64,000 bases of DNA from assembly GCF_040938485.1 (NCBI RefSeq), contig NW_027270904.1, positions 3,286,001 through 3,350,000 on the forward strand, written 5' to 3'. The translations under genes and the position numbers were made by a program. The notes below the pieces were generated by a model. The model was not told where the DNA came from. It made no database searches and saw only the letters and a list, made by a program, of their open reading frames with translations. Source of the stretch: Diadema antillarum (taxonomy: Eukaryota). This document shows, one piece after another, positions 529-62,583 of the stretch (within the stretch, counting starts at the first letter, position 1; each line of letters begins with the position of its first letter).

Positions 529-686
529 GGGACTACTGTAATGCTTCTGACAGCCACAAGCTATACAGAGCAGATCAGCACCAGGGGCTACGTATAAGCT
601 GTTCAACCAGATGATCAGGTAGGCCAGCATCTGTTCCGGAGCAAGGATTACCCAATCATCATGATCAGGTGCCACATGGCTGAGTG

Positions 687-41500: not shown

Positions 41501-44500
41501 TAACGATCGCCATGTGCATTAAGAGTTCAACAATACTGTGTTTCAGCCAATCCTATCCATTTCAGCGGTGGACCCACGCGGTGAAATCTGAGAAGAGGTT
41601 TGAGGCATATGACCGCATGAGCCTTACGTTTTGGCAAAGTTCCAGCTCCTTGATTTCGTGGATGGAGTTCCCTGTACGACGGAGGGAGTTGTCTGTTGCT
41701 GTCTCCTAATATGGGATGTAAAAACACAATAGAAAGGGCACAATTAGTGCAAGGAGATTACAATCCCCTATGCAATGATGATGAGCCGTATCAAAGGCAA
41801 TTACCCCCAGAGGGCAGTTCCCCCCCCCCCCCCCCCCCTCCCTTTTCCCCCCGCTAAATACTGGTTAGTGGTAAGGTTAAAGTAAAGATTAGGGTTAGGT
41901 TCAGAGTTTGGAGTTTGGGTTAGGAGTTTGGGTTAGGGTTAGGATTAGGTTCAGGATTAGGACTAGGATTAGGGCCAGGGGAAGGGTCCAGGGTAATTAC
42001 CCAGGGGGTAATTGCCCTAGACCTGCTTTGAGCTGATGCTAACAGAGATAAATACTAATATATCACCAGCAAGGCCAGAGTGTTATCAGAGGGCAACACC
42101 AAACTAACATGTATTCGAGTCGGTGGGACTATGACATGCTTTGTCATATCTAATCCCTCACAGAGTGTGTATGAGAGTGTATGAGGCTTCAGACCACATC
42201 CTCATTTAAGAGAAACCTTGGACAGACTCTCACTTCTTCACCACTGCGAGTACGTTGCAGTTTACAAAGGAAGTGCTTGACAATTTAATTGTCATCTGAA
42301 ACATAACACAACACACGCATTCACCGAAATGCCCACAGACAGACACGCATGTACGTCCCACAGCAGTTTGTGCAAGATTACAGTATGTCCTCTCTCAAAG
42401 TTAGTTTACATTACTAAACATACATTTGTAGTGCAAAATATTGCAAGTGAATGGTATGCTTACATATTACAGGTTTATCCAATGCATGAACTATTTGTCT
42501 GATCATTTTGTCTATGCATAGAATGTAAACCAGTTTAAATCAAATTAAATCAAATTCACTTTATTGATAATCATAAAAAACAGAAATGTATGCATTGTAA
42601 AATGTGCTGGGGAGTTCTCAAAGAAAGCCAAAGGCTTGAGACAAATGTGTTCCCCTTTGTAGAGTTGTAGTTGGTAGAGTTGGATTGCATAAAATTGCAT
42701 AAAATTTCCAGTGTATAACCAAAAAAAAAGAAATGAACACTGAGGTAAATTGACAGGTAAACATTTAAAAGGAACTCTGCAACCAAGCCCCTTGGTGTAG
42801 TAAATGAAACCTTAATTAACTGAAGTATATATTTCAAAGCATAGTCTGTACTCACCCACTCATATTAAGGCCGGTGGCGTTTCCTCTCAAACCGCCCCCT
42901 CGCCCCCTACTGCGGCATTCACTGTTGACGCCTCTTCCTCTACCACCTCTGCCACGCCCCCTGCCCCTCCCTCTGCCCCGCCCCCTTTCCCATCGCTCGG
43001 GAGTTTTGTCCATCTGGGCACACCTTTCTGGACCCGTTTGATGCAGAGACTGAGATGAACTACAGAAGAGGAAAAACAAACAAATAAAGACCACATAGTA
43101 AAATGTACCATAAAGTTAAAGCCCATAATATTGAAAAGGCAGACTGTGTTGTTGCTTTTTTTTTTTATTTTGCATGCATAATGAAGTGGACTGGGAATTT
43201 TCTAATACATGCGACGTTACCACTAGACGAGATATCAGCGAATCTACACTGACATCCTTCCATGCATATTAAAAGGCATATATCATAAAAGGAACAAATA
43301 CACGCAGAACAATCATTGTTTCAGGGCTCTAAGATAAAAACAAGACTAAGAAATTTAGAATTGATTGCAGAAAAATTGTTAAAAGATACTGCAAATATTG
43401 TCAAAGATACAGTGCTATCCTTCTTGGTCAGATAAGTATATAAACAAAACATAAAACTGTATACTAATTCCCACATGTCATTTTCACCCAAATCTGCCAT
43501 TTCAATACCATGCTTCCCATATTGTTGCAGTTCATGGATCAGACAAACCTGCCAGAGGTAAATGTTGTTTCAAGGACACAATAGCCACCCCCAATCTGAG
43601 AGAGAAACAGAAAACAGGTGACTCCCATTGCAACAAAGTTCTAAGGACTGCCCGTTTTCTTTCATTTATATCAAAATTTTGCAATAACGGAATAGCAATG
43701 AGCATCCAGTTATACTGCAGACACGGTTATTTTTGCGTGCAGATATTTTCGTGAATGAGGGGGTCACAGACATTTTCTCAAGATGCTGTTTTCGCAAATT
43801 GACACAAAGACAACAATAAGCGCACTGCGTGTTGTCAAATTCAAGGTCAAACTGTGATTCATGAAATTCACAAAAAATTAAACCCTCGTGAAAAAAAAAT
43901 AACAGCTATGAAATACAGTATATGATGTAGATGATAATTTGACGGGCTTGAATATACTCAGTTGCCTCAAGAATTTTGTTGTAGCTATGTTATATTGTAA
44001 AAGTTGAAATTTTCGCAGTGTTGAAATTTTCGCACATTTTGCAAAACCAGAAATTAACGCAAAAATAAAGGCACACAAATATTTTTTCTTGTCATATGTT
44101 CCAGTACTTGATGTCTTGATCCCGGAGAATTAAAAACCAGTGACAACTCTTCTTACCCGGCCGAGCGTGAAAAAGTAGTTGCGCGAAAATATCCACTTTT
44201 ACAGTAAGAGGAGTGCACTGTACATATTGCTGTCCACTCACTTGTCTCCACCAGCGGAGAGGATTCTCAGTCCAATGCCATGCTTCCCTCCACCACGCCC
44301 ATCTCTAACACGATCCCCTTCCGGCTCTACAGAATGCACGCAATCCTGGCCGGAAATCTTCTTCGGAATCGTTTTGGTGTTCTTCCGACTGTATGTCTGC
44401 ATATTCATAAAAATAGAACAGAATTGTACCCACAACTTGTGTAAGCACCTACTAATAAATCCTACTTATTACTGGCTTTGCAAAAGGTATAGAAACACTT

Positions 44501-45424
44501 TGAGAATTAATGTACTAATACACTACAAAGTAAAGTGATGTAGGGACATGGAGCTATACTCAATACAAAATACTTCAAGCCTTGTATTACTGTAAGGAAT
44601 ATCTGTTTGAACAAAAAAGCTTATGAATGAGCAGATCCTACATTTCCAGGGCAGTGATATCCATAATGGTAAATGAGGAACAATACAATATGTCTGCTAT
44701 AATGTATCTGCCAAGTACTTATGTCATACAAATGTACCATAGGGAAGGTACAGATTTTTTTGAGGATGTACACCACTGTATGCTGCAATGACTGACCTTC
44801 ATAAATGACTAGTGATGGATCCACACAATCAAGCACTTTACGAACATGAGGAAATACTCTAGTGTATAATGGGCTGTCAGAAAGCCACAGGTAAGAAAAA
44901 AAAAAAGGGTCTCACTAATGATCACAGGAATTTCACAATGAAGCTGAAAGGAATTTAAAAAAAAATACAATTATGTGCATTTCATGGTACAATATTTCAC
45001 ATCACAGTTACACATGGCCAAACCAAAGAGAGTGTGTTTACCTGTGGACTAAGGTGCTGGCTTGCACTCGTAGCAGAGGATGCCGATGAGTTCGGACCGA
45101 TAACAATCACTTCTGGATCTCTGAAATTAAAAGACATAGATAGCTTGATGTACAATATGTACTACACTTTACTGGAATATTGTCTACTTGTAAATTAGGC
45201 ACAAATTTATAAAACATCACTTGGCTGGGTTATGTACATTACTGACCTAAGGATATTGCTAAAATAATCTTTAATGCAAAATAGCCAAAACACATACAGT
45301 ACATATGTGTATAACACATGTAGATACCACAAATGATGTTACCTCATGTACTACACCAAGAAGAGTACACATACAATGTACTGACATTTGCAACCATTGA
45401 TTCCCCATCAAGATTTTGTTTCTT

Positions 45425-45459
<35 letters not shown>

Positions 45460-48290
45460 TGTTCATCAGGAATGTCCTTTCTGATAAACAACCCTACACT
45501 GTATCTCTTCTCTGTCACATTTATCACTATTAAAATATGTCATGCACGACATGGTGGCATTTGTACCAATGCTTCAGGTTTCTGCTTACATTTGTAAATG
45601 CAAACAGTAAAATGTATTGGCAAGATGTGAAAACTGTTATTATTTAAACTGGCATTGTATTTGACAAATACCTTGTGTTCTGCACAAAATGCTCCTTCAA
45701 AATACATTGTAATTTTACAGAGGGTGTAGAATATACAACTGAAAATGACTAACAGTAAAAGACTTAAAAAATAAAAAAAAACTCTTGCAAGTTCAACACA
45801 CACATAGTGGCATTCATGTACACTTGTACAGACATGCCATTATACTTCACTTGCTTGACATGAGCATTTTGGTCAAACATCTTTGACAGAAAAACATGAT
45901 TTTCCATACTCCATAATTAATATTTAATTCTACTTAATGAAATACTGAGCTCATTTGAGAATGAATACAGGGCAGAGCCAGGCAGAGCAAATGCTGTTTC
46001 GATAAGGTTGACGGATTTGATATTCACTTGCGTCTTACTTGTTTTTATACCCAGGATGCATTCTCCTCACTGCAATTTTGTTACCATGACAAGTGTAAAT
46101 TTAAAGTGCTAACAATAGACACTCCAATAAAATCAGCAACATAATGTAATGTACACTGTACTGTACATCTATATCCCACGCTACACTCGTAGATCTCTAA
46201 ATCCATGCACCTACAATGTACTGTGTGATCAAGTGCATACAATTTTGTACATATGGTATGATTTACAGACAAACATACAGTGTACATTAGTCTACCCTGT
46301 ACTTCATGTGCAAAAAGAACCAAACCTGGAACTGCATTTGGTTACACTATATGGAATTCCAGGTGATGCCATCCACCATTGAGATGCATTCTAGTAAGTA
46401 CTTTATACATCAGATGTACATCAATTCATTTGACCTGCACCATGTATAATGTAATATTCTCCTCACTATAACATGATCTTGAGAAGTGACTGATATGACT
46501 ACTGCAGTTTTGTGCGTCTAGGTACTTTATAATACACAGTAGGTTCCCTTGTATTTTTTGATGATATCCAATAACATGTCAATATGCATCAAACATGAAT
46601 GCAAATATCCAAAAGATATTCAATATTGATAATAAAATATAACAAGAACTCTACATCCCATTTCAGTTTTCTGTTCACATGCAATGTACATCCATATTGC
46701 TACTGTATGTATACAGAATATTTGTCCATTACAACTTGAGGGGGATACAACAAAGACTTTAAATACAGATGAAGCAACAATACATTGTACATGCCATAAG
46801 ATAATGTTGATTGGCATGCCTCAGTGTTACCTAACTTGCCACAAGAGGTGTATGATATATTACAATGTACATTCACATACACCATCACTAAATTTCAACA
46901 AATTTACTGAATCAGTGATCAACGTGTTGTAATATCTTCTTTGATACCAGGTACAACTGCAAAATACTGTATAACATACATTGTACATTTTGAATTTTTG
47001 CATGAACAGGAAAGTTTCAGAAAGTGACTGTAAACCCTGTGACCCATTCAAGATCTATATTGTATGGGGGGGGGGATGAAAATATTTTGATAGTTCGTCA
47101 ATGTGCAGTGCTTCTTGGGTGGTAGAAGGCTTAATGGTGCACCATGTATTCTTTCTAGGGTATGTATTTGGCCCTGAAAAGGGCCTACCCAGTCCCATCG
47201 TTTCGGCAAGCATGTTCTTGTCGTTCTCAAGGAACGGCCACAACATGCTTGCCGAAACGTCGGGACTGGGTAGGCCCTTTTCAGGGCCAAATACATGTAC
47301 ATACCCTAGAAAGAATATGTGGTGCACCATTAAGCCTTCTACCACCCAACGTTCTACCGCCACGGAAGCCTTTAAAGATTTCTACACTGCTTCTGACCTA
47401 CATTAATCTAAGTTCGATTGAATTCAATGTTTGATTAATGGCAAATAGATAAATTTCCATAATTAGATCTCTCCTCTCACCTTTACCAGCTCTATCTTAC
47501 AATTGTATACTTTTTCCAGTCTCATGTTTGAGTGACTTTCATCTGGTGCTTAAGAAAATGCTAAAAATGTTATGCTTTGGACTCAGACTCCAGACCCAGG
47601 AAATATGACCTAATGACCTATGATCTACAAGATATATCATGTTCAGAGCTGCATCACAATGGTACTTCAAACTATGATACAATGTACTTCAGCTATGATA
47701 CCTTCAAACTATGATACTTACTAGCTGTATCCTGTATATGCCAGAGTATAACCATGTCAAGGTCACCTTTGTAACAGTGTTCAAAATATATTAAAGCCAT
47801 TCAGCAAGTCTAATTTATTGCAAATCAGGACTTCCCAACAATTTTGCAAGTGGCTAAATTCGTAATCAAACAATACCGTATTATTACGCACCTTGTTCAT
47901 GTACTGTTTACTGCACACCAGCACTGTACATGTATGACTTAATGAGTGCGTGTCGCATTTATGTTGGCATCAGAGTTGATATTTTTGTATGTTCTTTAAT
48001 TCTTGAATAGTGCCCAACTAACGAAATTCACAAAAATCAAAACCTTTAAAAACTGAAATACATGGCATACATTATTTAGAAGTTCTACACAGATGGATAT
48101 AAGAAAGAAAAAAAAGTATATTTATGAATATATTGTCCTGTGCATCATTACCTGAACCAGGTACAAAACTAAACTTACTGGGTAGATGAGGTCTCTTGTC
48201 CAGAAGTTCTTTTGTTTGGTGTCTGCACTGTACGTGTTAAAATGCTCTGCTGAAAACCATGGGTCGGATCTTTATCCACTGCGTCCAAAG
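16160..48290 (-). CDS. SENP6: SENP6-like SUMO protease (Ulp1/peptidase C48, SENP6/7 family), multi-exon; first exon unresolved
   Basis: 21 exons with canonical AG/GT sites whose phases chain without a break: 48179-48290, 45042-45120, 44242-44396, 42856-43059, 41628-41705, 40135-40373, 39325-39401, 36431-37103, 33566-33655, 32224-32288, 31119-31335, 29702-29884, 29083-29202, 27847-28096, 26865-26984, 25445-25666, 23575-24127, 21567-21745, 20581-20649, 19088-19238, 16160-16294. With the ATG at 49243 the CDS is 3984 nt (1327 aa). Motifs: FPPPPTIGG...[23 protein letters not shown] (His), LIFDSL (Asp), [10 protein letters not shown] (Gln/Cys). N-terminal ALD...GF, TYSRKN and GNATGLNM resemble vertebrate SENP6 (from memory). 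Confidence 0.9.
16910..18200 (+). mobile_element. Helentron/HINE-like (DINE-1/pearl/Tsp-type) element with about seven 161-bp tandem units
   Basis: Subterminal IRs ATACCCCCGCC (16920) and GGCGGGGGTAT (18187), tandem core, (CCGA)n microsatellite at 18105-18152, 3' hairpin. Confidence 0.8.
19088..19238 (-). CDS. SENP6: SENP6 exon with catalytic Cys ([23 protein letters not shown])
   Basis: Canonical C48 PQQxNxxDCG motif; cag/gtgagg splice sites. Confidence 0.95.
20581..20649 (-). CDS. SENP6: SENP6 exon with catalytic Asp ([22 protein letters not shown])
   Basis: FDSL motif; phases fit both neighbours; ccag/gtgagt sites. Confidence 0.93.
21567..21745 (-). CDS. SENP6: SENP6 exon in the catalytic-domain insertion (AAQNC...KHFE)
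   Basis: tacag/gtgagt sites; phase 0 in, phase 2 out, matching neighbours. Confidence 0.8.
22402..22560 (+). mobile_element. tRNA-derived SINE
   Basis: Box A-like TGCTCAGTGG, box B-like GATTCAAGT, then a GTGTCGTTGGGCAAG conserved body. Confidence 0.65.
22802..22886. mobile_element. 85-bp TTAA-TSD (piggyBac-type) mini-MITE
   Basis: TTAA|CCCATTGAGGA...TCCTCAATGGG|TTAA; related copies at 34863-34947 and 36315-36399, partial near 29515-29565. Confidence 0.85.
23575..24127 (-). CDS. SENP6: SENP6 exon with catalytic His ([10 protein letters not shown]) followed by a low-complexity insert
   Basis: HW motif; tccatttccag acceptor, gtatgt donor. Confidence 0.92.
24802..25413. mobile_element. Tigger/pogo-like MITE ends (CAGTCAAACCTG...CAGGTTTGATTG) enclosing other sequence
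   Basis: Inverted termini; repeated GGCCACCTGTCTATAGCAGCCAC subterminal motif. Confidence 0.6.
25445..25666 (-). CDS. SENP6: SENP6 catalytic exon ([11 protein letters not shown]...[22 protein letters not shown])
   Basis: Conserved C48 motifs; canonical splice sites. Confidence 0.95.
26865..26984 (-). CDS. SENP6: SENP6 exon opening the catalytic domain ([17 protein letters not shown]...[12 protein letters not shown])
   Basis: Poly-Pro loop-1 diagnostic of SENP6/7, plus the LND motif. Confidence 0.95.
27022..27232. mobile_element. TACTGTA MITE, subfamily C; relatives at 48994-49195, 43713-43920, 8772-8865 (partial)
   Basis: TACTGTAAAAC...GTTTTACAGTA ends. Confidence 0.75.
27262..27781 (+). 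repeat. About 520-bp direct duplication with 40746-41266 (MITE plus AT-rich flank)
   Basis: Colinear, highly similar sequence from GCATA.CTCGTGCAGGTAAA through the end of the MITE. Confidence 0.88.
27536..27781. mobile_element. TACTGTA...TACAGTA MITE, subfamily A (Tc1/mariner-type ends); copies at 21165-21386 (partial), 33177-33420, 41023-41266, fragment near 30670-30790
   Basis: Alignable by eye; TA-containing palindromic ends; CGCGAAA-rich interior. Confidence 0.85.
27847..31335 (-). CDS. SENP6: SENP6 exons 31119-31335, 29702-29884, 29083-29202 and 27847-28096 (PH-like pre-catalytic region)
   Basis: Phase-consistent exons giving ...[13 protein letters not shown]...FKFNFQ/SNIHKC...[17 protein letters not shown]-like alternating hydrophobic beta-strand patterns, as expected for the SENP6/7 pre-catalytic domain (inference). 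Confidence 0.78.
32127..32209 (+). repeat. About 22-bp minisatellite (AGGTCATTAGACAGAGGTCAG) x3.7
   Basis: Read directly. Confidence 0.9.
32224..33655 (-). CDS. SENP6: SENP6 exons 33566-33655 ([16 protein letters not shown]) and 32224-32288
   Basis: Classic hydrophobic-plus-acidic SUMO-interacting motif; phases 1 and 0 fit. Confidence 0.85.
34303..34862. mobile_element. TTAA-flanked element with AAGG-type ends (Kolobok-like); relatives at 12179-12789, 18518-18906 and 28183-28535 (partial)
   Basis: TTAAAGG...CCTTAA ends; 28183 and 34303 share GTAGAACACATC.ATGAAAGTTTGAGGAAAAT.GGACAATC; 18518 has a 29-bp imperfect TIR. Confidence 0.65.
34863..34947. mobile_element. 85-bp TTAA mini-MITE copy (opposite orientation to 22802)
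   Basis: TTAA on both sides, same TIRs. Confidence 0.85.
35102..36207 (+). mobile_element. Second Helentron/HINE-like element with six alternating ~158/142-bp units
   Basis: Subterminal IRs GTCCCCGCCG (35131) and CGGCGGGGAC (36194), tandem core, (ACGG/GACA)n microsatellite at 36075-36158, 3' hairpin. Confidence 0.8.
36315..36399. mobile_element. 85-bp TTAA mini-MITE copy 31 bp from a SENP6 donor
   Basis: Same internal sequence; right TSD degraded to TTAC. Confidence 0.8.
36431..37103 (-). CDS. SENP6: SENP6 large N-terminal exon (CxxC-x9-CxxC motif; 25-aa internal repeat)
   Basis: 673-nt open exon, ttgcag/gtatgc sites, phase 0 in and phase 1 out. Confidence 0.85.
38503..39318 (+). repeat. 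Degenerate purine-rich satellite (GATGA/GGAAT/GATAG units) with ~140-157 bp higher-order period
   Basis: TTGGAATGATGAATAGATGAA recurs near 38635, 38790, 38945 and 39085. Confidence 0.85.
39325..45120 (-). CDS. SENP6: SENP6 N-terminal exons 45042-45120, 44242-44396, 42856-43059, 41628-41705, 40135-40373, 39325-39401
   Basis: All have canonical sites and chain in phase; they encode PEVIVI (SIM-like), TYSRKN, an RG-repeat tract and S/T-rich linkers. Confidence 0.8.
41796..42016. mobile_element. TIR element containing degenerate (TTAGGG)-like repeats
   Basis: GGCAATTACCCCC / GGGGGTAATTGCC; GGGTTAGG variants at 41870-41975. Confidence 0.6.
47115..47349. repeat. 235-bp near-perfect palindrome (foldback MITE-like)
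   Basis: Arms of about 100 bp; ORFs on opposite strands give nearly identical peptides ([10 protein letters not shown]). Confidence 0.9.
48179..48290 (-). CDS. SENP6: SENP6 second exon ([15 protein letters not shown]...)
   Basis: Strong ccttcttag acceptor and gtaagt donor; needs a phase-1 upstream exon; its phase-2 end fits exon 45120. Confidence 0.75.
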
Positions 48291-48467
48291 CTAAGAAGGA
48301 GACAAAGGGGAAAAGGATTTGAGTGAATAAATTAATTCCATTTAGACTGTATTGGGCAAATTTGCTATACATGTACACACAATGACAGATATTGCTGGCC
48401 TTGAGGGGAATGCAACATTTATTGCCTGAAAAAGAATCATACTGCCTTAAATTACATTCACACGCAG

Positions 48468-48972
48468 TTGCCAAACTTGAAGTTTACAGCTGTAGGCCGA
48501 AAACTTACATTGTAACTGTCGATGATTACCTCCACTCGTGAATTCAAGATGCGGGTTCACACGGGCACCTAAACTTCAAGTTACAACTCACAAGAGAATC
48601 CCACTCGATGATTACGCCGGAAGTGCAGAGTCTTTGCTAGATGACCCTATGCCCATACAACAGCACAGCTGGAGGTTGACCCCAGATGTGAACGAGAAGC
48701 GAGGTTCACGCTAACTCACAAGCTCGTTGATTATTGTGTCCACACGGAGCGAAACTACGAGTGGGGACCCCCCCCATGGCTCATGAAGAGAGCGTAAACC
48801 CTAAGATGTCTCGTGGTTCTAATCATAGACTAAACTTTAAGATTGCTAACTTTCGAGTGCGTCCATACGGTGCTAAACTACAAGCTAACCATCGAGAGTT
48901 AAGTTTTCGACCTATAAAACTTAAAGTTTAGGAACAGCGTGTGAACCTAACTGGAGTCTTCAACTTTGGCAA
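48468..48972. mobile_element. About 500-bp TIR element (MITE-like)
   Basis: TTGCCAAACTTGAAG versus CTTCAACTTTGGCAA (14/15 inverted match); no clear TSD. Confidence 0.5.
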
Positions 48973-49230
48973 TAAAATTTCAGTGAGGGCAATTACTGTA
49001 AAACGAGGAATGTTCGCATGCACTTTAATTTCGCGAGCGCCAAGATTCGCGAAGTTAAAATGTGTGCAAAAGTTCTTGTCTACACTATATGCATTGAATG
49101 CCAGTGGCAATTCGCGAAAATTTCTTGCCACAAAAAAGGCTGTCGGCTCTAATTCGCGAAAATTTTATGCAGCGAATTTATCATGTTTTACGGTAATGTC
49201 TAGGGGCAAGACCAGTGCTGCAGGACTTAC

Positions 49231-49309
49231 CCAACAAAACCATAGCATGAACGCTCAAGGGGAGTTCTTCCGTTGTCCACGCAAATCTTTTTAGGTTAGG
49301 GGATAAAAT
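49231..49309 (-). CDS. SENP6: Candidate SENP6 start exon (ATG at 49243, MVLL|A, phase 1)
   Basis: ctcttcccttcag acceptor, gtaagt donor, good Kozak context (gctATGG), correct phase. Confidence 0.5.
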
Positions 49310-50476
49310 CTGAAGGGAAGAGTGACCCTGGGCTTGTTAATGATAGCGCCCAGTTGTGTTAATCAAATGAGCGAATGTGCGACCTCTTGCCAAATGGCAG
49401 GGCGTGCCTCTTCCGCCCCATGCACAGCCCATACCACGATTGCCCATGCAGCTTGGGGACGGTCAATACTAGTCATGTGGTTGGTCAGTTGTGAAAAAGA
49501 CAAGATCTCATGAGACTGTTCCCAAGAAACGGAACCAGGCATGAATGTACATGCAAGGTGAAATGCACACTTGGGTGAATGCCACACTAGCAGATTCAGT
49601 TACTACCTCAGGCCATTATTACTGAAGGTAGGTTAGAATATTGCATACAATTGTACATTAGTATTGGCACACACCTCCAAAGCATTATCTGAGCCAACAA
49701 ATTCTGGCAAAGGCAAATATTTAAGAGAAAAGTGCCTAAATTTGGTTCTCAGTAGTTGATAATGCCAAGTTCCGCCTAACACTAACTGTCAAGATTGGCA
49801 ACTATTACATGAAATTTAAAAACAAATTTCAGAAGGCCAAGTACACAAATAACTGCCAACACAGACTGGAATTTTGTAGGGAAAATTAAGAGTATGACTC
49901 TTTTTTTCCTTGTCATAATATTTCGGTGGGTATAAATTGATTGTCAAAACTTTGGTCTATACAGCAGCATACCATGCACTTCATGGCTAAACATTACCTG
50001 CACAAATGTCTTCAAACAAGTAACAACAGTTAACCCAAATATTGGCGATTCTTTACCTAGTTTTTTTTTTTAATGTCCTTTTTCTGTTGAGTGGAAACCT
50101 TGCCACCTCTGACTTCATTCTACATCACAGGTAGCTCTTTCAGCCATACTGAAGACATGGTATAAGCATTCTTATACAACATAAGCTACATTTGAACCAA
50201 GAGGGCAAAACCTGTGCACTATGACATCAGTTAATATGAAAAGATACTCTTGTGTTCAAAGTGTTTAATCATTTCTGCCAATGTGAATGGGTCTTCACTT
50301 CACAAATTAAGTTGTTTGATCATTCCATTTATCAAATGTTTTTAATCATGCTTTTTTTATTATTGTTTTTTTGCATCCACTTAATATCCCCCTCTCAAAA
50401 TCATTCTTGCCTATGGTGATGTCACCCATGGGAAAACCAGCAGATATTAAAAGCATGTTCTGTGTAACAATACCAG

Positions 50477-50612
50477 GGGGGCGTTTCATCAACGAGTTCG
50501 TCGGAGGTTTTCACCGACAAATTTGCTATCAGCCAATCAGACACAAGGATTTCAGTAGCTTTTAACAGTTGTCAGTGTAAATCCCTGACAAAAAGTTTCA
50601 TGAAACGGTCCC
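50477..50612. mobile_element. PIF/Harbinger-like MITE with CWG TSD (CAG)
   Basis: GGGG(G)CGTTTCAT...ATGAAACGGTCCC ends; CAG on both sides; same family as 11298-11434 and 12943-13099. Confidence 0.75.
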
Positions 50613-50929
50613 CAGGCCTCGAATTAACCGACGGCCACCGACGGCCATGGCCGTCGGTGCCCCTCTCGTTGGCCGCACTGCCTTTTTTTCCTTAATCAAA
50701 GTTATGGCCCAAAAAAGATGTGCCCTTTTTCTTGTGGTCGTGGTGCCCTTTTAGAATGAAAGTTATTATTTATGACGTATAATATGCCCTTTCTCAAAGT
50801 CTACACTTTCATAAGCTTGAACAACTTTCCTGATCTCAAATATCATACCTTCAGTTCACTCGCGTCCCAATATATCTGATTCAAACTCAAAGTATCTTTC
50901 TGAGACGATGTGTAGAAGTCTACGTACAT

Positions 50930-51310
50930 GTACGCCCGACCGGTTTTTACCGTCCCGACTGCCTCCGCAGCGCAGCGGCCATAGAGTTACTAGCTAGGCA
51001 GCGGCGGGCCGGAGCAAGTGGTCGCAAGCCATGCTAAAAAATGCCAGGCCTGTCGGACGGCTGTGAGCATTGCCATCTCTCTCGCTCTGCATTCATGCCC
51101 GCATGCCCAAAGCAAAATGGCGCCGGAAGTGCTCCAAAGCGAGCGCGGCGTACGCGTTGAGAACGTACTGTATTACACAACCTACATCGTATTGCGTATG
51201 GCCTACTGCCTAACGTCGTCTGCTGCGGAGAGATCTTATGCATGCATGCGCTGCTGGAGTGTAGCAGCACGGTCGATAGCATACAGCTCTATGGGGCATT
51301 CACATCACGT
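50930..51310. promoter_or_regulatory. CpG-rich promoter-like segment with adjacent YY1 (CAAAATGGCG, 51113-51122) and ETS (CCGGAAGTG, 51123-51131) motifs
   Basis: Motifs read directly; CpG density is far above the AT-rich background. Confidence 0.55.
50951..50982 (-). CDS. Candidate alternative first exon MAAALRRQSG(R), phase 2
   Basis: ATG at 50980-50982 and donor gtaaaa; in frame only if spliced to exon 45120. Lies inside a TE-like element. Confidence 0.3.
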
Positions 51311-51614
51311 ATAAACACCCAACATACCCTTTCCAATGTGGCCTTGGTGCCCCTCTGACTGACCTAAGTGCCCTGGCCTCTTGGAAAAAGTGCCCTTTTC
51401 TAAATGGCCTTGCCCCTCCAAAATCCTATTTCAAGGCCTGCAATACCTAGTACACAGTATAACACGGGTACATCTTGCCAGAGCCAGGTGCATCAGTTCA
51501 GATGAGCAAGATAAATCTAAAATACTGTACACTACAATATTGCATACCTTTTCTTGCCATACACAATTCTGTAACATTTTCTAGCAATAACAGTTCCACA
51601 ATGTCATTCTATGA

Positions 51615-51745
51615 NNNNNNNNNNNNNNNNNNNNNNNNNNNNNNNNNNNNNNNNNNNNNNNNNNNNNNNNNNNNNNNNNNNNNNNNNNNNNNNNNNNNNN
51701 NNNNNNNNNNNNNNNNNNNNNNNNNNNNNNNNNNNNNNNNNNNNN
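51615..51745. other. Assembly gap (131 N)
   Basis: Run of N. Confidence 0.99.
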
Positions 51746-51935
51746 AGTCAAAGTATCAGTGGAGAGTATGAGGCATCATAATGTTTATGTCTCCTCACTT
51801 TGTTGTTTATGAGAAGCAATAAAGTTGATAGGGGAGGAGGTAAAGTGGGTGCACAAAAAAAAAATCATGTAACTAAGAAAATATAAGAACATGTCATAAG
51901 AAAGAATATAAAAGTGTACGTGATACATAAAAATG

Positions 51936-52148
51936 TACTGTAAAAGTGGATATTTTCGCGCAACTAATTTTTTGCACTTGGCCAGGTAAAAAGAGTTTCA
52001 CGTGTTTTCAATTCCGCGGAATCAAGATATCACGCACAGGAACATATGGCAAGCAAAAATATTCGCGTGCTTTCATTTTTGCGCTGGTTTCTGGTTGCGC
52101 GAAATGCGTGAAAATTTCAACACCGCGAAAATTTCCACTTTTACAGTA
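51936..52148. mobile_element. TACTGTA MITE, subfamily B; reversed copies at 43993-44206 and about 61836-62040
   Basis: TACTGTAAAAGTGGATATTTTCGCG...TCCACTTTTACAGTA. Confidence 0.85.
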
Positions 52149-52794
52149 CTTTGATCAAACAATTACAGAACTTGTGACTGTACACCTACATTGTACACCG
52201 GTACATAGGATTGTACAGTGTACCGTCGTACTCTACAGTTGTGCTCCCATCAGCAGAAGTGAACACACATTTGTACTTAAATAGATGTACAAAGTTCTAG
52301 ATTAGATCAAGGGACCTGTAAAGGCCTCTTGTACATGTAGCTAGTTGTACAACATATACATAAATGTATACAATATAGACACAATGTATGTATGTGATAC
52401 AAGATGGAAACTTGAATGTACAGTCAAAACCATTATAGAACAAATTGAACATACAACCTGTTTAAGAATGTTTTCATTACTGAGATTACACTCAGGCTTT
52501 TAACAATGTACAAATTATACATGTACAGAATGTGGATATCCTATCTACATGTACCTCTGATTTTTCTTCATCTTCATACACACCCTCACTTTGCAATGCA
52601 ATCTCTATCGGTGTTATCCCATATTCCAGGGAGCCTTGTTTCAATGAAATGCTTGCCACGTACAACATCTTCAGCAACATTTATCAAATGAATATAGCTG
52701 ACATTCTCTTAATGAATTTGCATATTGCATGATGAGATGAAGCATGAAACAGGTCAAGAAATATTTTCTACAAGATGACGGAACTGGTTACATG

Positions 52795-53001
52795 ACATTT
52801 GCTCCTGCGACATTTGCTCCCATGAAATATCTGCACGCTAAAGCCAAACATAAATTCTATTAACCACAAAGAAACATAACCCTAACCCTAATCCTAATCC
52901 TCACATCAAACTATAAACCTAAAACCCTATAACAACCCTAACCCTACATGTAAGTCCTTGGAGAAAAAAAGACCGGAGCAGTTGTCGCAGGAGCAAAATG
53001 T
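52795..53001. mobile_element. TIR element containing (CCCTAA)-like repeats
   Basis: ACATTTGCTCCTGCGACA / TGTCGCAGGAGCAAAATGT; CCCTAACCCTAATCCTAA at 52878-52946. Confidence 0.6.
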
Positions 53002-56000
53002 TGTGTCATCAACAGAGCTACTGCCATGTTCACTGAATCTGACAAGGGAAATAAACATCAGTGTTAAGACAACTTTTGTGAAATCCAAGGGGTGTGTTTA
53101 TTCAACTTCTTTTGAGGTACACCATATAACACACTGTAATAATCACCAATATTTGAGGCATATTCCGGCAAACAGAGAAATGCAATGGTGCTTTCAATCA
53201 TGATTAGAAATGTTGATTTAAAATGAAAAAGAAAGAGCAATTTTGAATGCTTTTGAGCCACAAATGCCTTTTGTGAAGTAGATATCAGAATTTCAAGCAA
53301 AGCCACTTTGAAACATACATGTATATCGCGAGCCTTGTACATGAAATCTAATTCATGGGTCAAACAGGACAAAGCAGCTGGGCAGTGACAACTCCAAAAT
53401 TGTTATTATTTATACATTCACTTGTAGGACTCAAACAAGGCATCCCGAGAAATGCATGTCCAACCACTATTCATACACACCTTTCGAAATGCTTTTTGAA
53501 CATGGCTCTATCTTTCAAACATAAACACAGCCAAGGTGTGTATTGTCCAGGGTATTAATACACTTGTAACCCACTTGCCTGGTGGTGCAAAAACTCAATT
53601 CTTGGCAGGTAAAATGGACAGGCATGTGCCTGTCTAGGCCACTTGGATATGTGTGAGAATTCTTTTTTTGTACAAGATGCCCTGCTATGGTTGATATTTC
53701 ATGTGCTGGTACAGTGTAATGTACAACAGTCTGCAAATACTGATTGCCAGAATTTGCTCAAGTCCCCCTATCACATGACTTTATCACCATGTGTTGCCAT
53801 GTGCAATTACAAGTGTAAAGAAAAAAATCATCCCCAAATGTTGTAATAATGCTACTGGCAGTACCAGGCAATGGTAGCACATGTTTGAAATGCAACATTG
53901 TAGATGTCACACACTGTTTCTTCCCACAGTGTAATATCCCCTTCTTGTTGCTCAAACATGCAAAACACTGAATAGAGTAGGGCCTATAATAAACAAAATT
54001 GTAGTTTACACTGGAATAACCCAGGCACAGACATGACCAGAAACATCTCATTTTGAGCATAAAACTGGGGTCCGAGAGTTTTATATAGTCCTTAATATAT
54101 ATATTTGACATATAATACCTTCATATGTACATCGCACAATGCTGTAGAGAGTACATCTGTTACTGAGATAAGTTTTGGCAAGCATGTATTATTATTATTC
54201 TCAATGACTTCTCAAGAGTTTAGGTCAAGGGCTCTGCTGATATCCTAGAAATGACTTTTCTTTTTTCTTTCTTTCTTTTTTTTTGGGGGGGGGGGGTGAT
54301 ATACATGTATTGTATGTAATGTTTTATCTTGACAGTTCTATGAATTGGTGTATAGTTCCAAATTGGAGAGGACTGCAGATGGAATTCAACAACACTTTAA
54401 AAAAAAATGAACAAATTGTCTAACTTCCCCAAACTTTCCCCAGAATGTTTGCCTCATCTTTCATTATTCACTGAATGCTCACTTATTTGGGGGAGATGTT
54501 CCCTTCATGAGGTAAAGCTCTTAAGGATATCACTGAATTAAAAGAGAGTATGACAATAAATACAATGTACTGTAAATTTATACAATTGTGTGATCGCTAC
54601 ATATTCCAATGACACAGCAGTCCCTCAAGGACAGATTGCCCAACATACACATACTGATTGTGTATGATATCACGAAGAATATGCCAATCACAATGACCTT
54701 GTCAATCTGTGCATCAAACAGCTTCCCATGATGTGTACATGTTATCAATTCAGAGAATATACAGAAGGTACAAATAGTGAGTCAATAACACTTCAGCTTT
54801 CCTACGATGTTTGGTTATCTCATATCATAGTCCAGTTATGACACACTATAAAGAAACAAGAGTACTGCAACATACAGTGTACATGCACAGCAGCGGTTGT
54901 CATTGTATAGTGAAATATGTCTCCATGCTAAGATATTTCTGGACATGGTTACTACACATGTACCTTTGCTACTCTTTTCCATCAAAATATTTGAATAAGC
55001 CTTCTAGAAGTCCCTATTCATGAATTTAACATGATGCAAACGGTATGCACTTTAAGTGTTCACAAAGCACAAGGATAGGTGCATACAAACATCGGGCTTG
55101 TTCACGGTGGAAAGTAGCACCTCTAGTTCGCAGCAGCCATGGAACAGATCCTTAGGATAAATGTGAACCATGAGGCCTTCAACTAGTAAAATCCCACAGA
55201 TCAACCATGCCCCATCAATATGACAAAAAGAATATAAGCTCTGACAGTTAACAAAATTAAACAAATGTGTCAATGTGATACACATCAACCATTTTTTTTT
55301 TCAATTCAAACATATGAAATTCCATGCACTGATATGTACATTTCTGTACATGTCTCCAAGGAGAATTTTTAATAGCGAGTAATTCTACAGGAGATCATTA
55401 TTTATTACCCTTTTCGCAACTGAAGATTCTGTACGTATACATAATGGCCTATGGTTCAATGGAAAGCATAGCAATATTACTCTCATTTTGACAACATTCT
55501 AAATGATGTTAAATAGCTCACTGCATGTTTATATTGCCTTTAAGTTACGTTTATTTGAAAGCCTAAGGCTTTACCAAGAGAATGGTGTGTCACGGACATA
55601 ATTCTGACATACATTTGTAGACCTTTGACCCTTTTCAAACTATATAATCATAAATAAAACAAAAAAATGGTAAAGCATAAAATGGACAGGTGGTTTCAGG
55701 CATCTTAGGGAGTAATAAGATTGGCGGTGCTTGGGGTTTCATTGACTAATTATGGGTTAAACAAGGAATCTATAGTTGGGTGCTGTATAACCTTTTTTTT
55801 TTTTACCACTTCCTCAGTCAGGGAAGCAGATTTTCAAATTGTTGCACAACACTTGCCCAAACATAAACTTTACTTACTCGAAAAGAAAGTCCAAAAATAT
55901 AAGAAAATGATATAGAAATTCACACGTACAATTGTAAGTCAAGGGCTTAATGAAACACAACCATTTGAATAAACAGTACAAACATGTTGATTTGCATGCT

Positions 56001-58363: not shown

Positions 58364-60243
58364 ATTGAGTCGATCTTCGCTCACTGCCCTGAGCAGTAGG
58401 CTCAAAAACCGGGACTACATAATGTACTGTATCACAGCAGGACTGCTACAAGAGAACTGCCTGTCAGCGAATATGTGCACTGCAGTGTATGCTCATTGGT
58501 AACTGTCAACTCTAGTCGAGCGAGATTCTTTGGCTGTGTGTGTGCTTCATATGAAGCTGTATGTACACAAATCATTATACAGGGATTATGAGCCAAGTGC
58601 AATTACATTTGTATACATGTACATGATCAAGATGTGTACATATAAAGCCCGCCGCACACTATACGACTATACAACCTTAGGACCAAAAGACCCAGTCGTA
58701 CGACCTGCCAAGGCACATTATACGACCTGACTTCACGAGTAGGCTTACGACTGTTCTGTCTTCAGTACATTTTACCAATGAGTATTAATAGCGTGCGCAT
58801 ACATTTTACTGTATTGTCAATGGCTGAAAGCCCACTACCGCTTGTAGAAATTCGAGATGTCAAATCTCTACGACTGGCACTAAGACCCAGTCGTACGACT
58901 GGAAACTGGCAAGACTGTGACGTCACACTTCCGGTCTTAAGGTCGTATGACCGGTCGGATCGTATAGTGTGCGGCGGGCTTAACCCTAATCCCACAGGGT
59001 TTTTTGAGGGACTTGAAACCACCGGGGGGGGCTTTTTGGCCCCCACCCCCCCTTCAGATCTCGGTCGTGGATCGCGCGATCCTTGCAAAAATTTGCACTA
59101 AGGTAGAGGCCAATGTAATCTACAAGACTGTAGAGTTAGATTTTTCAAATTTTAATTTATGTATTTTATATCAATTAATCTATGCCAATTTATGCAAAAA
59201 TAAATTTTTGCCTATAAATAAAAAAATGAAGCCCCAAGACTTCTAATTTTTGGTGAACATATTCTTTTCAACAATACAGTAAAATGTATGCGCACGCTAT
59301 TAATACTCATTGGTAAAATGTACTGAAGACAGAACATTGAGTTGATCTTCGCTCACTGCCCTGAGCAGTAGGCTCAAAAACCGGGACTACATAATGTACT
59401 GTATCACAGCAGGACTGCTACAAGAGAACTGCCTGTCAGCGAATATGTGCACTGCAGTGTATGCTCATTGGTAACTGTCAACTCTAGTCGAGCGAGATTC
59501 TTTGGCTGTGTGTGTGCTTCATATGAAGCTGTATGTACACAAATCATTATACAGGGATTATGAGCCAAGTGCAATTACATTTGTATACATGTACATGATC
59601 AAGATGTGTACATATAAAGCCCGCCGCACACTATACGACTATACAACCTTAGGACCAAAAGACCCAGTCGTACGACCTGCCAAGGCACATTATACGACCT
59701 GACTTCACGAGTAGGCTTACGACTGTTCTGTCTTCAGTACATTTTACCAATGAGTATTAATAGCGTGCGCATACATTTTACTGTATTGTCAATGGCTGAA
59801 AGCCCACTACCGCTTGTAGAAATTCGAGATGTCAAATCTCTACGACTGGCACTAAGACCCAGTCGTACGACTGGAAACTGGCAAGACTGTGACGTCACAC
59901 TTCCGGTCTTAAGGTCGTATGACCGGTCGGATCGTATAGTGTGCGGCGGGCTTAACCCTAATCCCACAGGGTTTTTTGAGGGACTTGAAACCACCGGGGG
60001 GGGCTTTTTGGCCCCCACCCCCCCTTCAGATCTCGGTCGTGGATCGCGCGATCCTTGCAAAAATTTGCACTAAGGTAGAGGCCAATGTAATCTACAAGAC
60101 TGTAGAGTTAGATTTTTCAAATTTTAATTTATGTATTTTATATCAATTAATCTATGCCAATTTATGCAAAAATAAATTTTTGCCTATAAATAAAAAAATG
60201 AAGCCCCAAGACTTCTAATTTTTGGTGAACATATTCTTTTCAA
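58364..60243 (+). repeat. Near-identical tandem duplication (908-bp unit, 972-bp period)
   Basis: ORF track repeats with a 972 offset (58530/59502, 58762/59734, 59004/59976); copies at 58364-59271 and 59336-60243. Confidence 0.92.
58646..58980. mobile_element. 335-bp Tourist/Harbinger-like MITE, TSD TAA (duplicate at 59618-59952)
   Basis: 22-bp TIR AGCCCGCCGCACACTATACGA; TAA on both sides; internal TACGAC repeats. Confidence 0.8.
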
Positions 60244-60702: not shown

Positions 60703-62583
60703 TTAAGTCGTCTTTCCCAAGTTTCTCTGAGATTGATGAGTGATACCGAAAACAATTTACACACACTATCAATTAATTTAGATTTTTACCATGAATATGA
60801 CATCACAGTACATGTATAGGCATGGCACACATTTTTTTTAACTTCTTCTATATAAATCTCAATTTTGATTTAGTTAAACACACCACAGAATTTCAGAAAA
60901 TCCCAAAATATATCGCTGTGATAACCGACCAGAATCTGTCCGCCCCAGCCAGAATTCGAACAAGTGCTATGCACATTCAATGTCAATGTGCATACATGTG
61001 CACACGAGCACTAAAAAATGCACCGCAGCATGCCTTGTTGGTGCAAGGTTGCATCAGGAAAGTTGCTGCTCCCGTTGGTCAACAAATTCTGGCAAGTCGG
61101 CACTTGCATTCAATACCTGTACCGAACATTCAGTCAATTGCATCTGCATGTACAGAGATTTTATTTTTCTTTGCGTTTTTGCCGACACCATCACACTCTG
61201 AGCGTGCTAATTATAAGGAAAAATTTTTGCAACAAAATGACATATTTCTTGAATTTTAGTACTTTATCGGCGACCCTAATTCTTCACACTGGACTTAATT
61301 CCCATGCCCTTTTGAAAAATGGTGCCGATTTTGCATATTTGATGATGAAATTTTGGATTTTTGATGGATTTTTGAAGGTGACTAAGGGACTTTTCTGTAG
61401 TAAATGACAGTGCCAGTGTGTGAAATGATGTGATATACGTGTGTTGTGACAACAGAATTTACTGGCTTGTGTACGTTGTGATTAGTGATAAGTGGACGGA
61501 TTCTAGTGGCAGGTGGACGAATACTGGTCGGCTTTTACTCAACCCCTGTGACTGTGTGAGTGTATGTGTTAAATTAGTTGAGAGACATTAGGAAGTCTTT
61601 CCAAGAATAAAAGGAAGAAAGAAGAGAAAGATCAAACAGAAAAAAAAAAATAAGGAAACAAAAGATGCCATGCTGCAGAAATCAACCCCGCTGCTGTACA
61701 TATCATGCGTAAACGCCATTTGGTGGGGCCACATTCAGGAGTATTATACTAAGGAAGAGAGCTCTGCGGCCGTGATGATGTAACGCTGAACGCCACACAG
61801 TAGGGCTGAATTCACGCCTATAACAGGTACTCTAATAGTGGAAATTTTCGCAGTGTTGAAATTTTCACGCATTTTGCGCAACCAGAAACTAGAACGAAAA
61901 TAAAAGCATGCAAATATTTTTGCTTGCCATATGATCCAGTAGTTGACGTCTCAATTCTGCGGTACTAATAACTTGCGAAACTCTTCTTACCAGGCCGACT
62001 GCGAAAAATTAGTTGCGCGAAAATATCCACTTTTACAGTACACCTTACGCCGCCGTAAGTATGATTGAGGGTACCGCCTATCGCCACCCAAGGATCTCTA
62101 GCTCCTTTATTCCACAAGTATAAAGGTCACCAACAATTGAAAGTTTCATTTCAAATATCCCATATACATTCAAAATACTGCAGTTTTGAATCCCATGGCT
62201 GCCCTGTTGATTCTGAATCTCCGTAGTGAAATAACGCTGTTTTAGTGCGTGCGATGCATTGTTAATTCGCACGACTTAAAAGGATGCCTTGAGATTGGCA
62301 CCCCGTCCTCTATAGGTAATACATGTGAATTTCAGTCAAGCGTCGTGTAAGACTAAGAGGATCGAGGATGTGTAATGGAACTGTATTCAGTTTTTGCTAG
62401 TTTATGAGTTTGTTTTTCGTCTCTCTGTTGTTATCATTTTCACAATGCATGGCGCTTACTCCCACGCGTAACTTTTCGTTAGCAATATTCGGCTACAGCC
62501 ATACATTATGTATAGACAGGGTGGCGATGTTAAGGTACACCGTACCCTGCCGATATTCGCAATACGTTACGTGGCACCCTTAC

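What the first reader, a model, noticed from the sequence alone, without database searches (positions are those of the whole stretch)
50468..51446. Transposon with TIRs and TSD encloses a housekeeping-type promoter, an ATG and a splice donor in frame with SENP6
Seen: removing the 136-bp MITE and one of its CAG TSD copies restores CAATAC|CAGGCCTCGAATTA...TATTTCAAGGCCTG|CAATAC. That is an 828-bp element with 12/14 TIR match, a perfect 6-bp TSD, about eight same-orientation TGCCC subterminal motifs and a perfect 22-bp palindrome (50637-50658). Two other copies of the inner MITE family carry CWG TSDs, which supports this reconstruction. The interior (50930-51310) is CpG-rich, with adjacent YY1 and ETS motifs, a 12-aa uORF (50994-51032) and ATG GCC GCT GCG...CG|gtaaaa. 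Spliced to exon 45120 this gives [18 protein letters not shown] in frame. Established: hAT elements end in CAG/TAG and usually make 8-bp TSDs; some lineages make 5-7 bp. Inference: either a Pack-type element that captured a host promoter and first exon, or a TE exapted as a SENP6 promoter and alternative N-terminus.
Basis: partly seen in the sequence, partly recalled or inferred. Interest (0 to 1): 0.72.

Follow-up and report, generated by a model that had tools for sequence, protein, structure and literature searches.

The report
Young transposon upstream of SENP6 exon
This is a real but ordinary recent insertion of a common 830-base non-coding transposon, itself hit by a smaller one, in the 5' region of SENP6; its promoter-like motifs, ATG and splice donor recur in other copies of the repeat family genome-wide, so they say nothing particular about SENP6.

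Summary
Window 50613-51440 is one 828-bp copy of a repeat family. Homology of 29 other copies stops exactly at these ends, and 22 of the 29 have perfect 6-bp target-site duplications (TSDs). A 136-bp MITE sits in the element's first CAG. A second copy of this SENP6 5' region, 2.06 Mb away on the same contig, shows the precise empty site: one CAATAC, no MITE, no element.

The minus-strand ATG, 33-nt ORF and GT donor lie in a 5' arm shared by all sampled size classes that use these termini. This module has 64 exact copies and 377 sites with up to 3 mismatches. The YY1/ETS segment belongs to the ~830-bp subfamily (164 sites). CpG richness reflects youth: non-CpG divergence from consensus is about 1.2%. 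Core CpGs decay as fast as arm CpGs, so they show no protection. No coding capacity and no autonomous partner were found. The 6-bp TSD and CAG end fit the published hAT6 group, but no transposase link was shown. No RNA run was listed, so transcription and splicing are untested. Capture of host DNA remains possible only for 51117-51312. Earlier scan notes report a possibly active 6-bp-TSD hAT elsewhere in this genome; I did not test a link.

The parts
50468..50473 (.). Left copy of the 6-bp target-site duplication, CAATAC
   Evidence: The empty site in L052 has a single CAATAC.
50474..50476 (+). CAG: the first 3 bases of the outer element, duplicated as the MITE's 3-bp TSD (first copy)
   Evidence: The other family copies read flank|CAGGCC directly.
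50477..50612 (+). Nested 136-bp MITE with TIR GGGGGCGTTTCAT.../...ATGAAACGGTCCC and a CWG TSD, which matches the NuwaI type of the PHIS (PIF/Harbinger) superfamily
   Evidence: 1837 candidates, top 40 hits 99% identical. CAG/CTG TSDs. PMC4482050 describes the CWG TSD group.
50613..51440 (+). 828-bp non-autonomous cut-and-paste DNA transposon, a member of the ~830-bp subfamily
   Evidence: It has no ORF with a Pfam match and no Rfam match.
50613..50626 (+). 5' terminal inverted repeat, CAGGCCTCGAATTA
   Evidence: I7. The terminal 22-mer has 456 sites genome-wide and 0 in the reversed control.
50637..50658 (.). Perfect 22-bp palindrome, present in the family consensus
50613..51003 (+). 5' arm shared by all sampled size classes that use these termini (~830 bp, ~1010 bp, 1.6-2.7 kb, 3.3-4.9 kb)
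   Evidence: query positions 1-366/391 match in L031-L049.
50949..50982 (-). Minus-strand ATG (50982-50980), 33-nt ORF (MAAALRRQSGR) and GT donor (50950-50949), lying inside the shared 5' arm
   Evidence: The same 36-mer occurs at 64 exact sites and 377 sites with up to 3 mismatches. The 1010-bp class copy L047 reads GGCCGC here and has no ATG.
51004..51116 (+). Segment shared with the 3.3-4.9 kb class (86-89% identity) but not with the 1010-bp class
51117..51312 (+). Segment specific to the ~830-bp subfamily. It is CpG-rich and starts at the YY1-like/ETS-like motif AAAATGGCGCCGGAAGTG (51114-51131). Its origin is unknown.
   Evidence: The 22-mer has 69 exact sites and 164 sites with up to 2 mismatches. 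The top 40 hits to 51004-51312 are all full length at 95-98% identity.
51313..51440 (+). 3' arm shared by all classes, carrying TGCCC-type motifs and the 3' TIR (51427-51440)
   Evidence: The terminal 23-mer has 478 sites and 0 in the control.
51441..51446 (.). Right copy of the 6-bp TSD, CAATAC
45042..45120 (-). It has good acceptor and donor sites. It is listed for context and is not part of the transposon.
   Evidence: SENP6 catalytic exons lie further down the minus strand, at 19037-27034.

Best explanation
A young, non-coding cut-and-paste DNA transposon with a 14-bp TIR, a 6-bp TSD and TGCCC-type subterminal repeats inserted at a CAATAC site about 5.5 kb upstream of the first recognisable SENP6 coding exon. 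It most likely depends on a hAT6-type transposase supplied in trans (inferred). A 136-bp CWG-targeting MITE of the NuwaI/PHIS type later inserted into the element's first CAG. The CpG-rich core, the YY1/ETS-like motif, the uORF and the ATG plus splice donor all come from the family's master copy. They look fresh because the family is young. They are not a locus-specific promoter or first exon of SENP6. The in-frame relation to exon 45120 is best read as coincidence.

Shown: the element's identity, boundaries, TSD, nesting order and empty site, the copy numbers, and the family-wide nature of every 'promoter' feature.

Inferred: the superfamily, mobilisation in trans, and absence of function at SENP6.
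For: - Family membership and exact ends.
- 22 of 29 other copies have perfect 6-bp TSDs, all of different sequence.
- 456 and 478 sites for the two terminal motifs, against 0 in the reversed controls.
- Precise empty site in a 97-99% identical second copy of the locus. The same duplication covers exon 45042-45120.
- The ATG/donor lies in the arm shared by all classes and recurs at 64 exact and 377 near-exact sites.
- The YY1/ETS 22-mer is found at 164 sites.
- CpG transition rate is 5.9% in the core, 4.4-5.0% in the 5' arm, and about 1.2% at non-CpG sites. The window copy has itself lost CpGs in the core.
- No Pfam or Rfam signal.
- The MITE is absent from all 29 other copies and from the empty site, so it arrived after the element.
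- hAT families with 6-bp TSDs are an established group: PMC12730594.
Against: - No RNA data could be obtained; none was listed. Transcription from the core and a 50951-to-45120 junction are therefore untested, not excluded.
- The true first exon of SENP6 was not identified. Exon 45120 has no internal in-frame ATG, so some upstream start, or the ATG at 45137, is needed.
- The YY1-like and ETS-like motifs abut exactly as in real housekeeping promoters (my own knowledge, not tested here).
- No transposase-bearing partner with these termini was found among the roughly 45 end pairs I could inspect, so the superfamily is unproven.
- The second copy of the locus may be a paralogue rather than the other haplotype. 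If so, the element could be fixed at this particular copy.
Confidence: 0.85

Rival explanations
1. Exaptation: this particular copy serves as an alternative SENP6 promoter and first exon, giving MAAALRRQSGR joined to DPEVIVI...
For: - The ATG, a 33-nt ORF and a usable G|GTAAAA donor lie on the SENP6 strand, in frame with exon 45042-45120.
- Exon 45120 has no internal ATG in that frame.
- The sequence upstream of the ATG is CpG-rich and motif-rich.
Against: - The same module exists at 64 exact and 377 near-exact sites, so its presence is not selected for at SENP6.
- The prior for being in frame is 1 in 3.
- A second copy of the locus lacks the element.
- This copy's core has lost CpGs like any other copy.
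- The donor matches only about 6 of 9 consensus positions.
- An alternative in-frame ATG sits at 45137.
- There are no RNA data.
Confidence: 0.06
2. Pack-type capture: the ~830-bp subfamily arose when a shorter non-autonomous element acquired about 200 bp (51117-51312) of a host gene's promoter and 5' end. It has since spread that fragment to about 160 sites.
For: - This segment is absent from the 1010-bp and the 3.3-4.9 kb classes, which share both arms.
- It begins at a YY1-like ATGGCG abutting an ETS-like CCGGAAGTG and has CpG o/e 1.34.
- Each size class carries a different, unrelated middle. That is typical of filler or captured DNA.
Against: - No solitary copy was found. Of the 32 motif sites on contigs up to C163, 30 lie next to family termini or the family 5' arm. 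For the other two, C25:607364 and C129:52398, no flank could be inspected.
- All top 40 hits to 51004-51312 span it in full at 95-98% identity, as expected of family copies; their flanks were not examined.
- The segment has no protein or RNA family match.
- It could equally come from an unsampled autonomous element.
Confidence: 0.15
3. The core is the transposon's own promoter or 5' UTR, kept from an autonomous ancestor by internal deletion and pointing rightward on the + strand, antisense to SENP6.
For: - 50613-51116 is shared, with a ~170-bp indel, with the longest class.
- The YY1-like ATGGCG is on the + strand.
- Long conserved arms are typical of deletion derivatives.
Against: - The 3.3-4.9 kb elements have no transposase ORF. 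They are filled with 21-bp tandem arrays and internal repeats.
- The YY1/ETS part itself is missing from them.
Confidence: 0.2

Closest known systems
hAT6 group of the hAT superfamily (hAT families with 6-bp TSDs; Kapitonov and Jurka 2007, as cited in PMC12730594)
   Same: - 6-bp TSDs of varied sequence.
- Short imperfect TIR starting with CAG.
- Long subterminal arms with short repeated motifs.
- Many internally rearranged non-autonomous derivatives that share only the ends.
   Different: - No transposase was linked to these termini.
- The fifth terminal base is C, where the usual hAT end has G (YARNG, from memory).
- The TGCCC motifs have the same orientation in both arms.
Pack-type transposons (Pack-MULE, Pack-CACTA and similar)
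   Same: A non-autonomous TIR element with a non-transposon-looking, gene-5'-end-like internal segment (51117-51312), amplified to many copies.
   Different: No parental host locus was found. The ATG/donor that suggested a captured first exon lies in the transposon's own shared arm.
NuwaI group of the PHIS (PIF/Harbinger-ISL2EU-Spy) superfamily, for the inner MITE (PMC4482050)
   Same: A 3-bp CWG TSD, an animal host, and a Tourist-like GGGG.CGTTT terminus.
   Different: Only the 136-bp MITE was seen. No autonomous NuwaI partner was looked for.
TE-derived alternative promoters and first exons of host genes
   Same: An intragenic or upstream TE in sense orientation offers an ATG and a donor in frame with a host exon.
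   Different: There is no evidence of transcription, splicing, fixation or conservation, and an empty-site copy of the locus exists.

Membership tests
Cut-and-paste (TIR) DNA transposon, non-autonomous | Terminal inverted repeats, a TSD of fixed length at many independent sites, an empty site, and no coding capacity | tested here: met
   - TIR 12/14 in this copy and 13/14 in the consensus.
- 22 of 29 copies have perfect 6-bp TSDs.
- Empty site.
- No ORF with a family match.
hAT superfamily (hAT6 group) | TSD length of 8 bp, or 6 bp for hAT6 | tested here: met
   6 bp in 22 of 29 copies. The hAT6 definition comes from PMC12730594.
hAT superfamily (hAT6 group) | A transposase with the hAT catalytic and dimerisation domains, encoded by an element with the same termini | tested here: inconclusive
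None of the 20 longer elements sampled encodes one.
hAT superfamily (hAT6 group) | Terminal YARNG-type motif (recalled from memory) | tested here: inconclusive
   The terminus is CAGGC. The first four positions fit and the fifth does not.
IS3EU/GingerRoot | 6-bp TSD with TA..TA termini (PMC10045372) | tested here: not met
   The termini are CA..TG.
Dada | No TIRs, and insertion into specific small-RNA genes (PMC3706591) | tested here: not met
   TIRs are present. Target sites are diverse and not RNA genes.
Pack-type (gene-fragment-carrying) transposon | An internal segment with an identifiable parental host locus outside the element | tested here: inconclusive
   No solitary copy was found among the inspectable sites, but the survey covered only part of the genome.
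Exapted TE promoter or first exon of SENP6 | Transcripts that start in the TE and splice to a SENP6 exon | not testable with these tools
   No RNA run was listed, and read laying was therefore not used.
Exapted TE promoter or first exon of SENP6 | Insertion fixed or conserved at the locus | tested here: not met
   The second copy of the locus on the same contig has the empty site. Whether that copy is allelic or paralogous is unresolved.
NuwaI (PHIS) MITE, for the inner element | 3-bp CWG TSD | tested here: met
   - CAG at both flanks here.
- 11 of about 30 copies have strictly identical CAG or CTG flanks, and nearly all right flanks start with CWG.
- The group is described in PMC4482050.

The most novel reading that the evidence does not exclude
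A recently active 6-bp-TSD transposon family has spread a ready-made module to a few hundred sites in a sea-urchin genome. The module is a CpG-rich YY1/ETS-type promoter-like core plus an ATG and a splice donor pointing outward. At some sites, possibly this polymorphic SENP6 allele, it may drive chimeric transcripts. That would give a natural presence/absence experiment on TE-born first exons.
Probability: 0.1. Interest if true: 0.55.

Novelty: new member of a known kind. Interest (0 to 1): 0.25.

Why it matters
As it stands, this is a clean annotation result. It gives a precisely bounded nested insertion, a clear 6-bp-TSD family with several size classes, and an empty-site control inside the same assembly. 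It also shows how family-wide TE sequence can pass for a gene's promoter and first exon.

It would matter more if RNA data showed that copies of the family start transcripts and splice into host genes. The insertion differs between two copies of the locus, so the two SENP6 versions could then be compared directly.

Tried and rejected
- **RNA evidence.** The look-up of sequencing runs listed no RNA holder.
- **Rfam.** Nothing on 50400-51500 at E up to 1.
- **Pfam.** Nothing beyond noise on the two longest core ORFs or on eight ORFs of the long elements.
- **Autonomous partner.** I paired the first 100 listed 5' and 3' termini and fetched every pair more than 3 kb apart, plus examples of each shorter class. 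The 3.3-4.9 kb elements hold 21-bp tandem arrays and internal repeats, with no transposase. The 1.6-2.7 kb ones hold unrelated filler or nested repeats.
- **Parental host locus for the core.** A DNA search with 51004-51312 returned only full-length 95-98% matches to the segment; their flanks were not examined. I cross-checked coordinates instead.
- **SENP6 N-terminus from annotated relatives.** The one large HMMER search, with the 244-aa exon at 36378-37109, found a single weak hit at E 6.7e-4. The true first exon stays unknown.
- **Joined peptide.** The spliced peptide (TE exon plus exon 45120) was not searched, following the operators' rule on spliced models.
- **Earlier findings by sequence.** A search with the 5' arm gave nothing.
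- **IS3EU and Dada.** Both were considered because of the 6-bp TSD and rejected on termini and target features.

Full report
**What is in the sequence**

- CAATAC lies at 50468-50473 and again at 51441-51446.
- Between them the sequence reads CAG, then a 136-bp MITE (50477-50612), then CAG again, continuing as CAGGCCTCGAATTA....
- The far end reads ...TATTTCAAGGCCTG.
- The repeat finder reports the 14-nt terminal inverted repeat at 86% complementarity (I7), the 50637-50658 palindrome, and the MITE's own inverted ends.
- The core is GC 0.56-0.58 with CpG o/e of about 1.0-1.2.
- AAAATGGCG|CCGGAAGTG lies at 51114-51131.
- On the minus strand there is an ATG at 50982-50980, a 33-nt open frame (MAAALRRQSGR), and a GT donor at 50950-50949.

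**It is one copy of a large, young family**

- A search of the window's own genome with 50616-51440 gave 732 first-look candidates. All 40 scored were essentially full length at 91-96% identity.
- BLAST of the 29 other fetched copies against the window shows homology stopping at 50613 and 51440.
- 22 of those 29 copies have perfect 6-bp direct repeats at their flanks, all of different sequence. Most of the remainder are off by a base or truncated.
- Seven pairs of copies have identical flanks on different contigs, so the assembly holds many regions twice. This looks like uncollapsed haplotypes (inference).
- The 5' terminal 22-mer occurs 456 times and the 3' terminal 23-mer 478 times, allowing 1 mismatch. 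The reversed controls give zero.
- Copies are 97-98% identical to their consensus. Non-CpG divergence is about 1.2%.

**The empty site**

- The 824 bp to the left of the insertion has one other full-length match, 97% identical, 2.06 Mb away on the same contig.
- That locus (L052) aligns to window 48155-50474 at 98.7% and resumes at 51454.
- It reads ...CTGTGTAACAATAC|CTAACAGTAT..., with a single CAATAC, no MITE and no element.
- The duplication is collinear and also covers the exon at 45042-45120.
- I could not decide whether this is the other haplotype placed in the same scaffold or a true paralogue.
- Either way, the insertion post-dates about 1-2% of divergence, and a SENP6 5' region exists without it.

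**Nesting order**

All other family copies read flank|CAGGCC. The window reads CAATAC-CAG-[MITE]-CAG-GCC. The MITE therefore entered the element's first three bases and duplicated CAG.

The MITE family is very abundant and very young, with 1837 candidates and its top 40 hits 99% identical. It shows CAG or CTG at its flanks. This matches the NuwaI group of the PHIS superfamily, defined by CWG TSDs and found mainly in animals (PMC4482050).

**Where the 'promoter, ATG and donor' come from**

Pairing the listed 5' and 3' termini revealed several size classes:

| Class | Notes |
|---|---|
| ~830 bp | The class of the window copy |
| ~1010 bp | The commonest |
| 1.6-1.7 kb, 2.2 kb, 2.7 kb | Intermediate |
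| 3.3-4.9 kb | The longest |

I fetched 20 examples and compared them with the window copy.

- Positions 1-391 (50613-51003) are shared by all classes.
- Positions 399-504 (51011-51116) are shared with the long class only.
- Positions 699/701-828 (the 3' arm) are shared by all classes.
- Positions 505-700 (51117-51312), which start at the YY1/ETS motif, are found only in the ~830-bp subfamily and its variants L043 and L050.

The ATG/donor module therefore sits in the transposon's own common arm. Its 36-mer has 64 exact sites and 377 sites with up to 3 mismatches. The 1010-bp class copy L047 reads GGCCGC there and has no ATG. The YY1/ETS 22-mer has 69 exact sites and 164 with up to 2 mismatches.

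**Is the core a protected CpG island?**

I used 23 non-redundant copies and scored CpG-to-TpG/CpA changes against the consensus.

| Region | CpG transition rate |
|---|---|
| Subfamily-specific core | 5.9% |
| 51004-51116 | 6.0% |
| 5' arm (two parts) | 4.4% and 5.0% |
| Non-CpG sites, for comparison | 0.9-1.35% |

CpGs in the core decay as fast as elsewhere. The window copy has itself lost six CpGs, three of them at 51064, 51242 and 51246 in the central CpG-rich part. This is indirect evidence. It argues that the CpG richness is inherited from a young master copy, not maintained by promoter activity in the germ line.

**Coding and RNA content**

- No ORF in the element or in the long relatives matches Pfam. 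The best value is E 0.07, far below the cut-offs.
- Rfam finds nothing.
- The long elements are filled with a 21-bp tandem array built on the TGCCCTTTT motif and with other internal repeats.
- I found no autonomous partner.

**Superfamily**

- IS3EU/GingerRoot make 6-bp TSDs but end in TA..TA (PMC10045372). This element ends in CA..TG.
- Dada elements lack TIRs and target small-RNA genes (PMC3706591).
- hAT families with 6-bp TSDs are an established group, hAT6, placed among animal hAT lineages (PMC12730594). That is the best fit.
- Membership still needs a transposase, which I could not link.
- An earlier scan note (s1-229846) reports a possibly active hAT with a 6-bp TSD elsewhere in this genome. 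Another (s1-211225) calls the genome a sea urchin. Both are untested leads.

**SENP6 context**

- SENP6 catalytic exons are on the minus strand at 19037-27034, with further exons up to 45120.
- Exon 45042-45120 has good splice sites and reads ..[12 protein letters not shown]...
- The element lies 5.5 kb upstream of it, in sense orientation for the ATG/donor.
- I could not identify the real first exon. The one large protein search, with the 244-aa exon, found no usable relative.
- The other CpG-rich patches upstream include known repeats: 48988-49197 recurs in the window and in other loci, and 58762-59101 is repeated at 59734-60073.
- An in-frame ATG at 45137, directly upstream of the acceptor, would also open the frame ([13 protein letters not shown]...) if the exon extended upstream. 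This shows how easily such frames arise.

**What could not be done**

- No RNA run was listed, so transcription and the 50951|45120 junction remain untested.
This stopped a fuller hunt for a solitary parental copy of 51117-51312 and for an autonomous element.
- Among motif sites on contigs up to C163, all but two could be tied to family termini or the family arm by coordinates.

**Verdict**

It is a genuine transposon, probably of the hAT6 type. Its promoter-like core, ATG and donor are family-wide sequence, not a SENP6 feature, and the 'captured first exon' lies in the transposon's own arm. Host-DNA capture remains open only for the ~200-bp subfamily-specific segment. Interest is low to moderate.

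Noticed in passing
G000:C16:1273476-1280827 (L052), compared with window 44600-53166: The SENP6 5' region is present twice on the same contig, 2.06 Mb apart and collinear. Identity is 97-99%, dropping to about 93% right of the insertion site. This is either a haplotype duplication in the assembly or a recent segmental duplication.
   Followed up: partly
window 51940-52146: A 207-bp MITE with TIR GTAAAAGTGGA.../...TCCACTTTTAC is absent from the second copy of the locus, so it is another insertion difference. Related copies lie at window 61828-62044 and 43992-44206, and in L006 and L029.
   Followed up: partly
L031-L039 (for example L031:930-1530): The 3.3-4.9 kb relatives of the element carry a long 21-bp tandem array built on the same TGCCCTTTT motif that forms the subterminal repeats. 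They have further internal repeats and no transposase ORF.
   Followed up: partly
L043:1035-1837, compared with window 17392-18199: One copy of the transposon family is interrupted by an insertion 97% identical to the window's 17.0-18.2 kb repeat. That repeat is the element another first-stage note calls Helentron-type.
   Followed up: no
window 45135-45137 (minus strand): An in-frame ATG lies 15 nt upstream of the exon-45120 acceptor, and the nearest upstream in-frame stop is at 45164-45162. It would give [13 protein letters not shown]... if the exon extended upstream.
   Followed up: no
window 58762-59101 and 59734-60073: Two identical CpG-rich segments lie about 972 bp apart, with identical 107-108-aa ORFs on both strands. 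This is a tandem duplicate or repeat and not an obvious gene.
   Followed up: no
Copies lie at window 27021-27233 and 8770-8850, and in the flanks of L014, L017 and L028.
   Followed up: no
window 684-2975 (+): A 763-aa single ORF whose sequence looks like a tubulin-tyrosine-ligase-like (TTLL) protein lies downstream of SENP6's 3' end, on the opposite strand. This call is by eye, with no family search.
   Followed up: no
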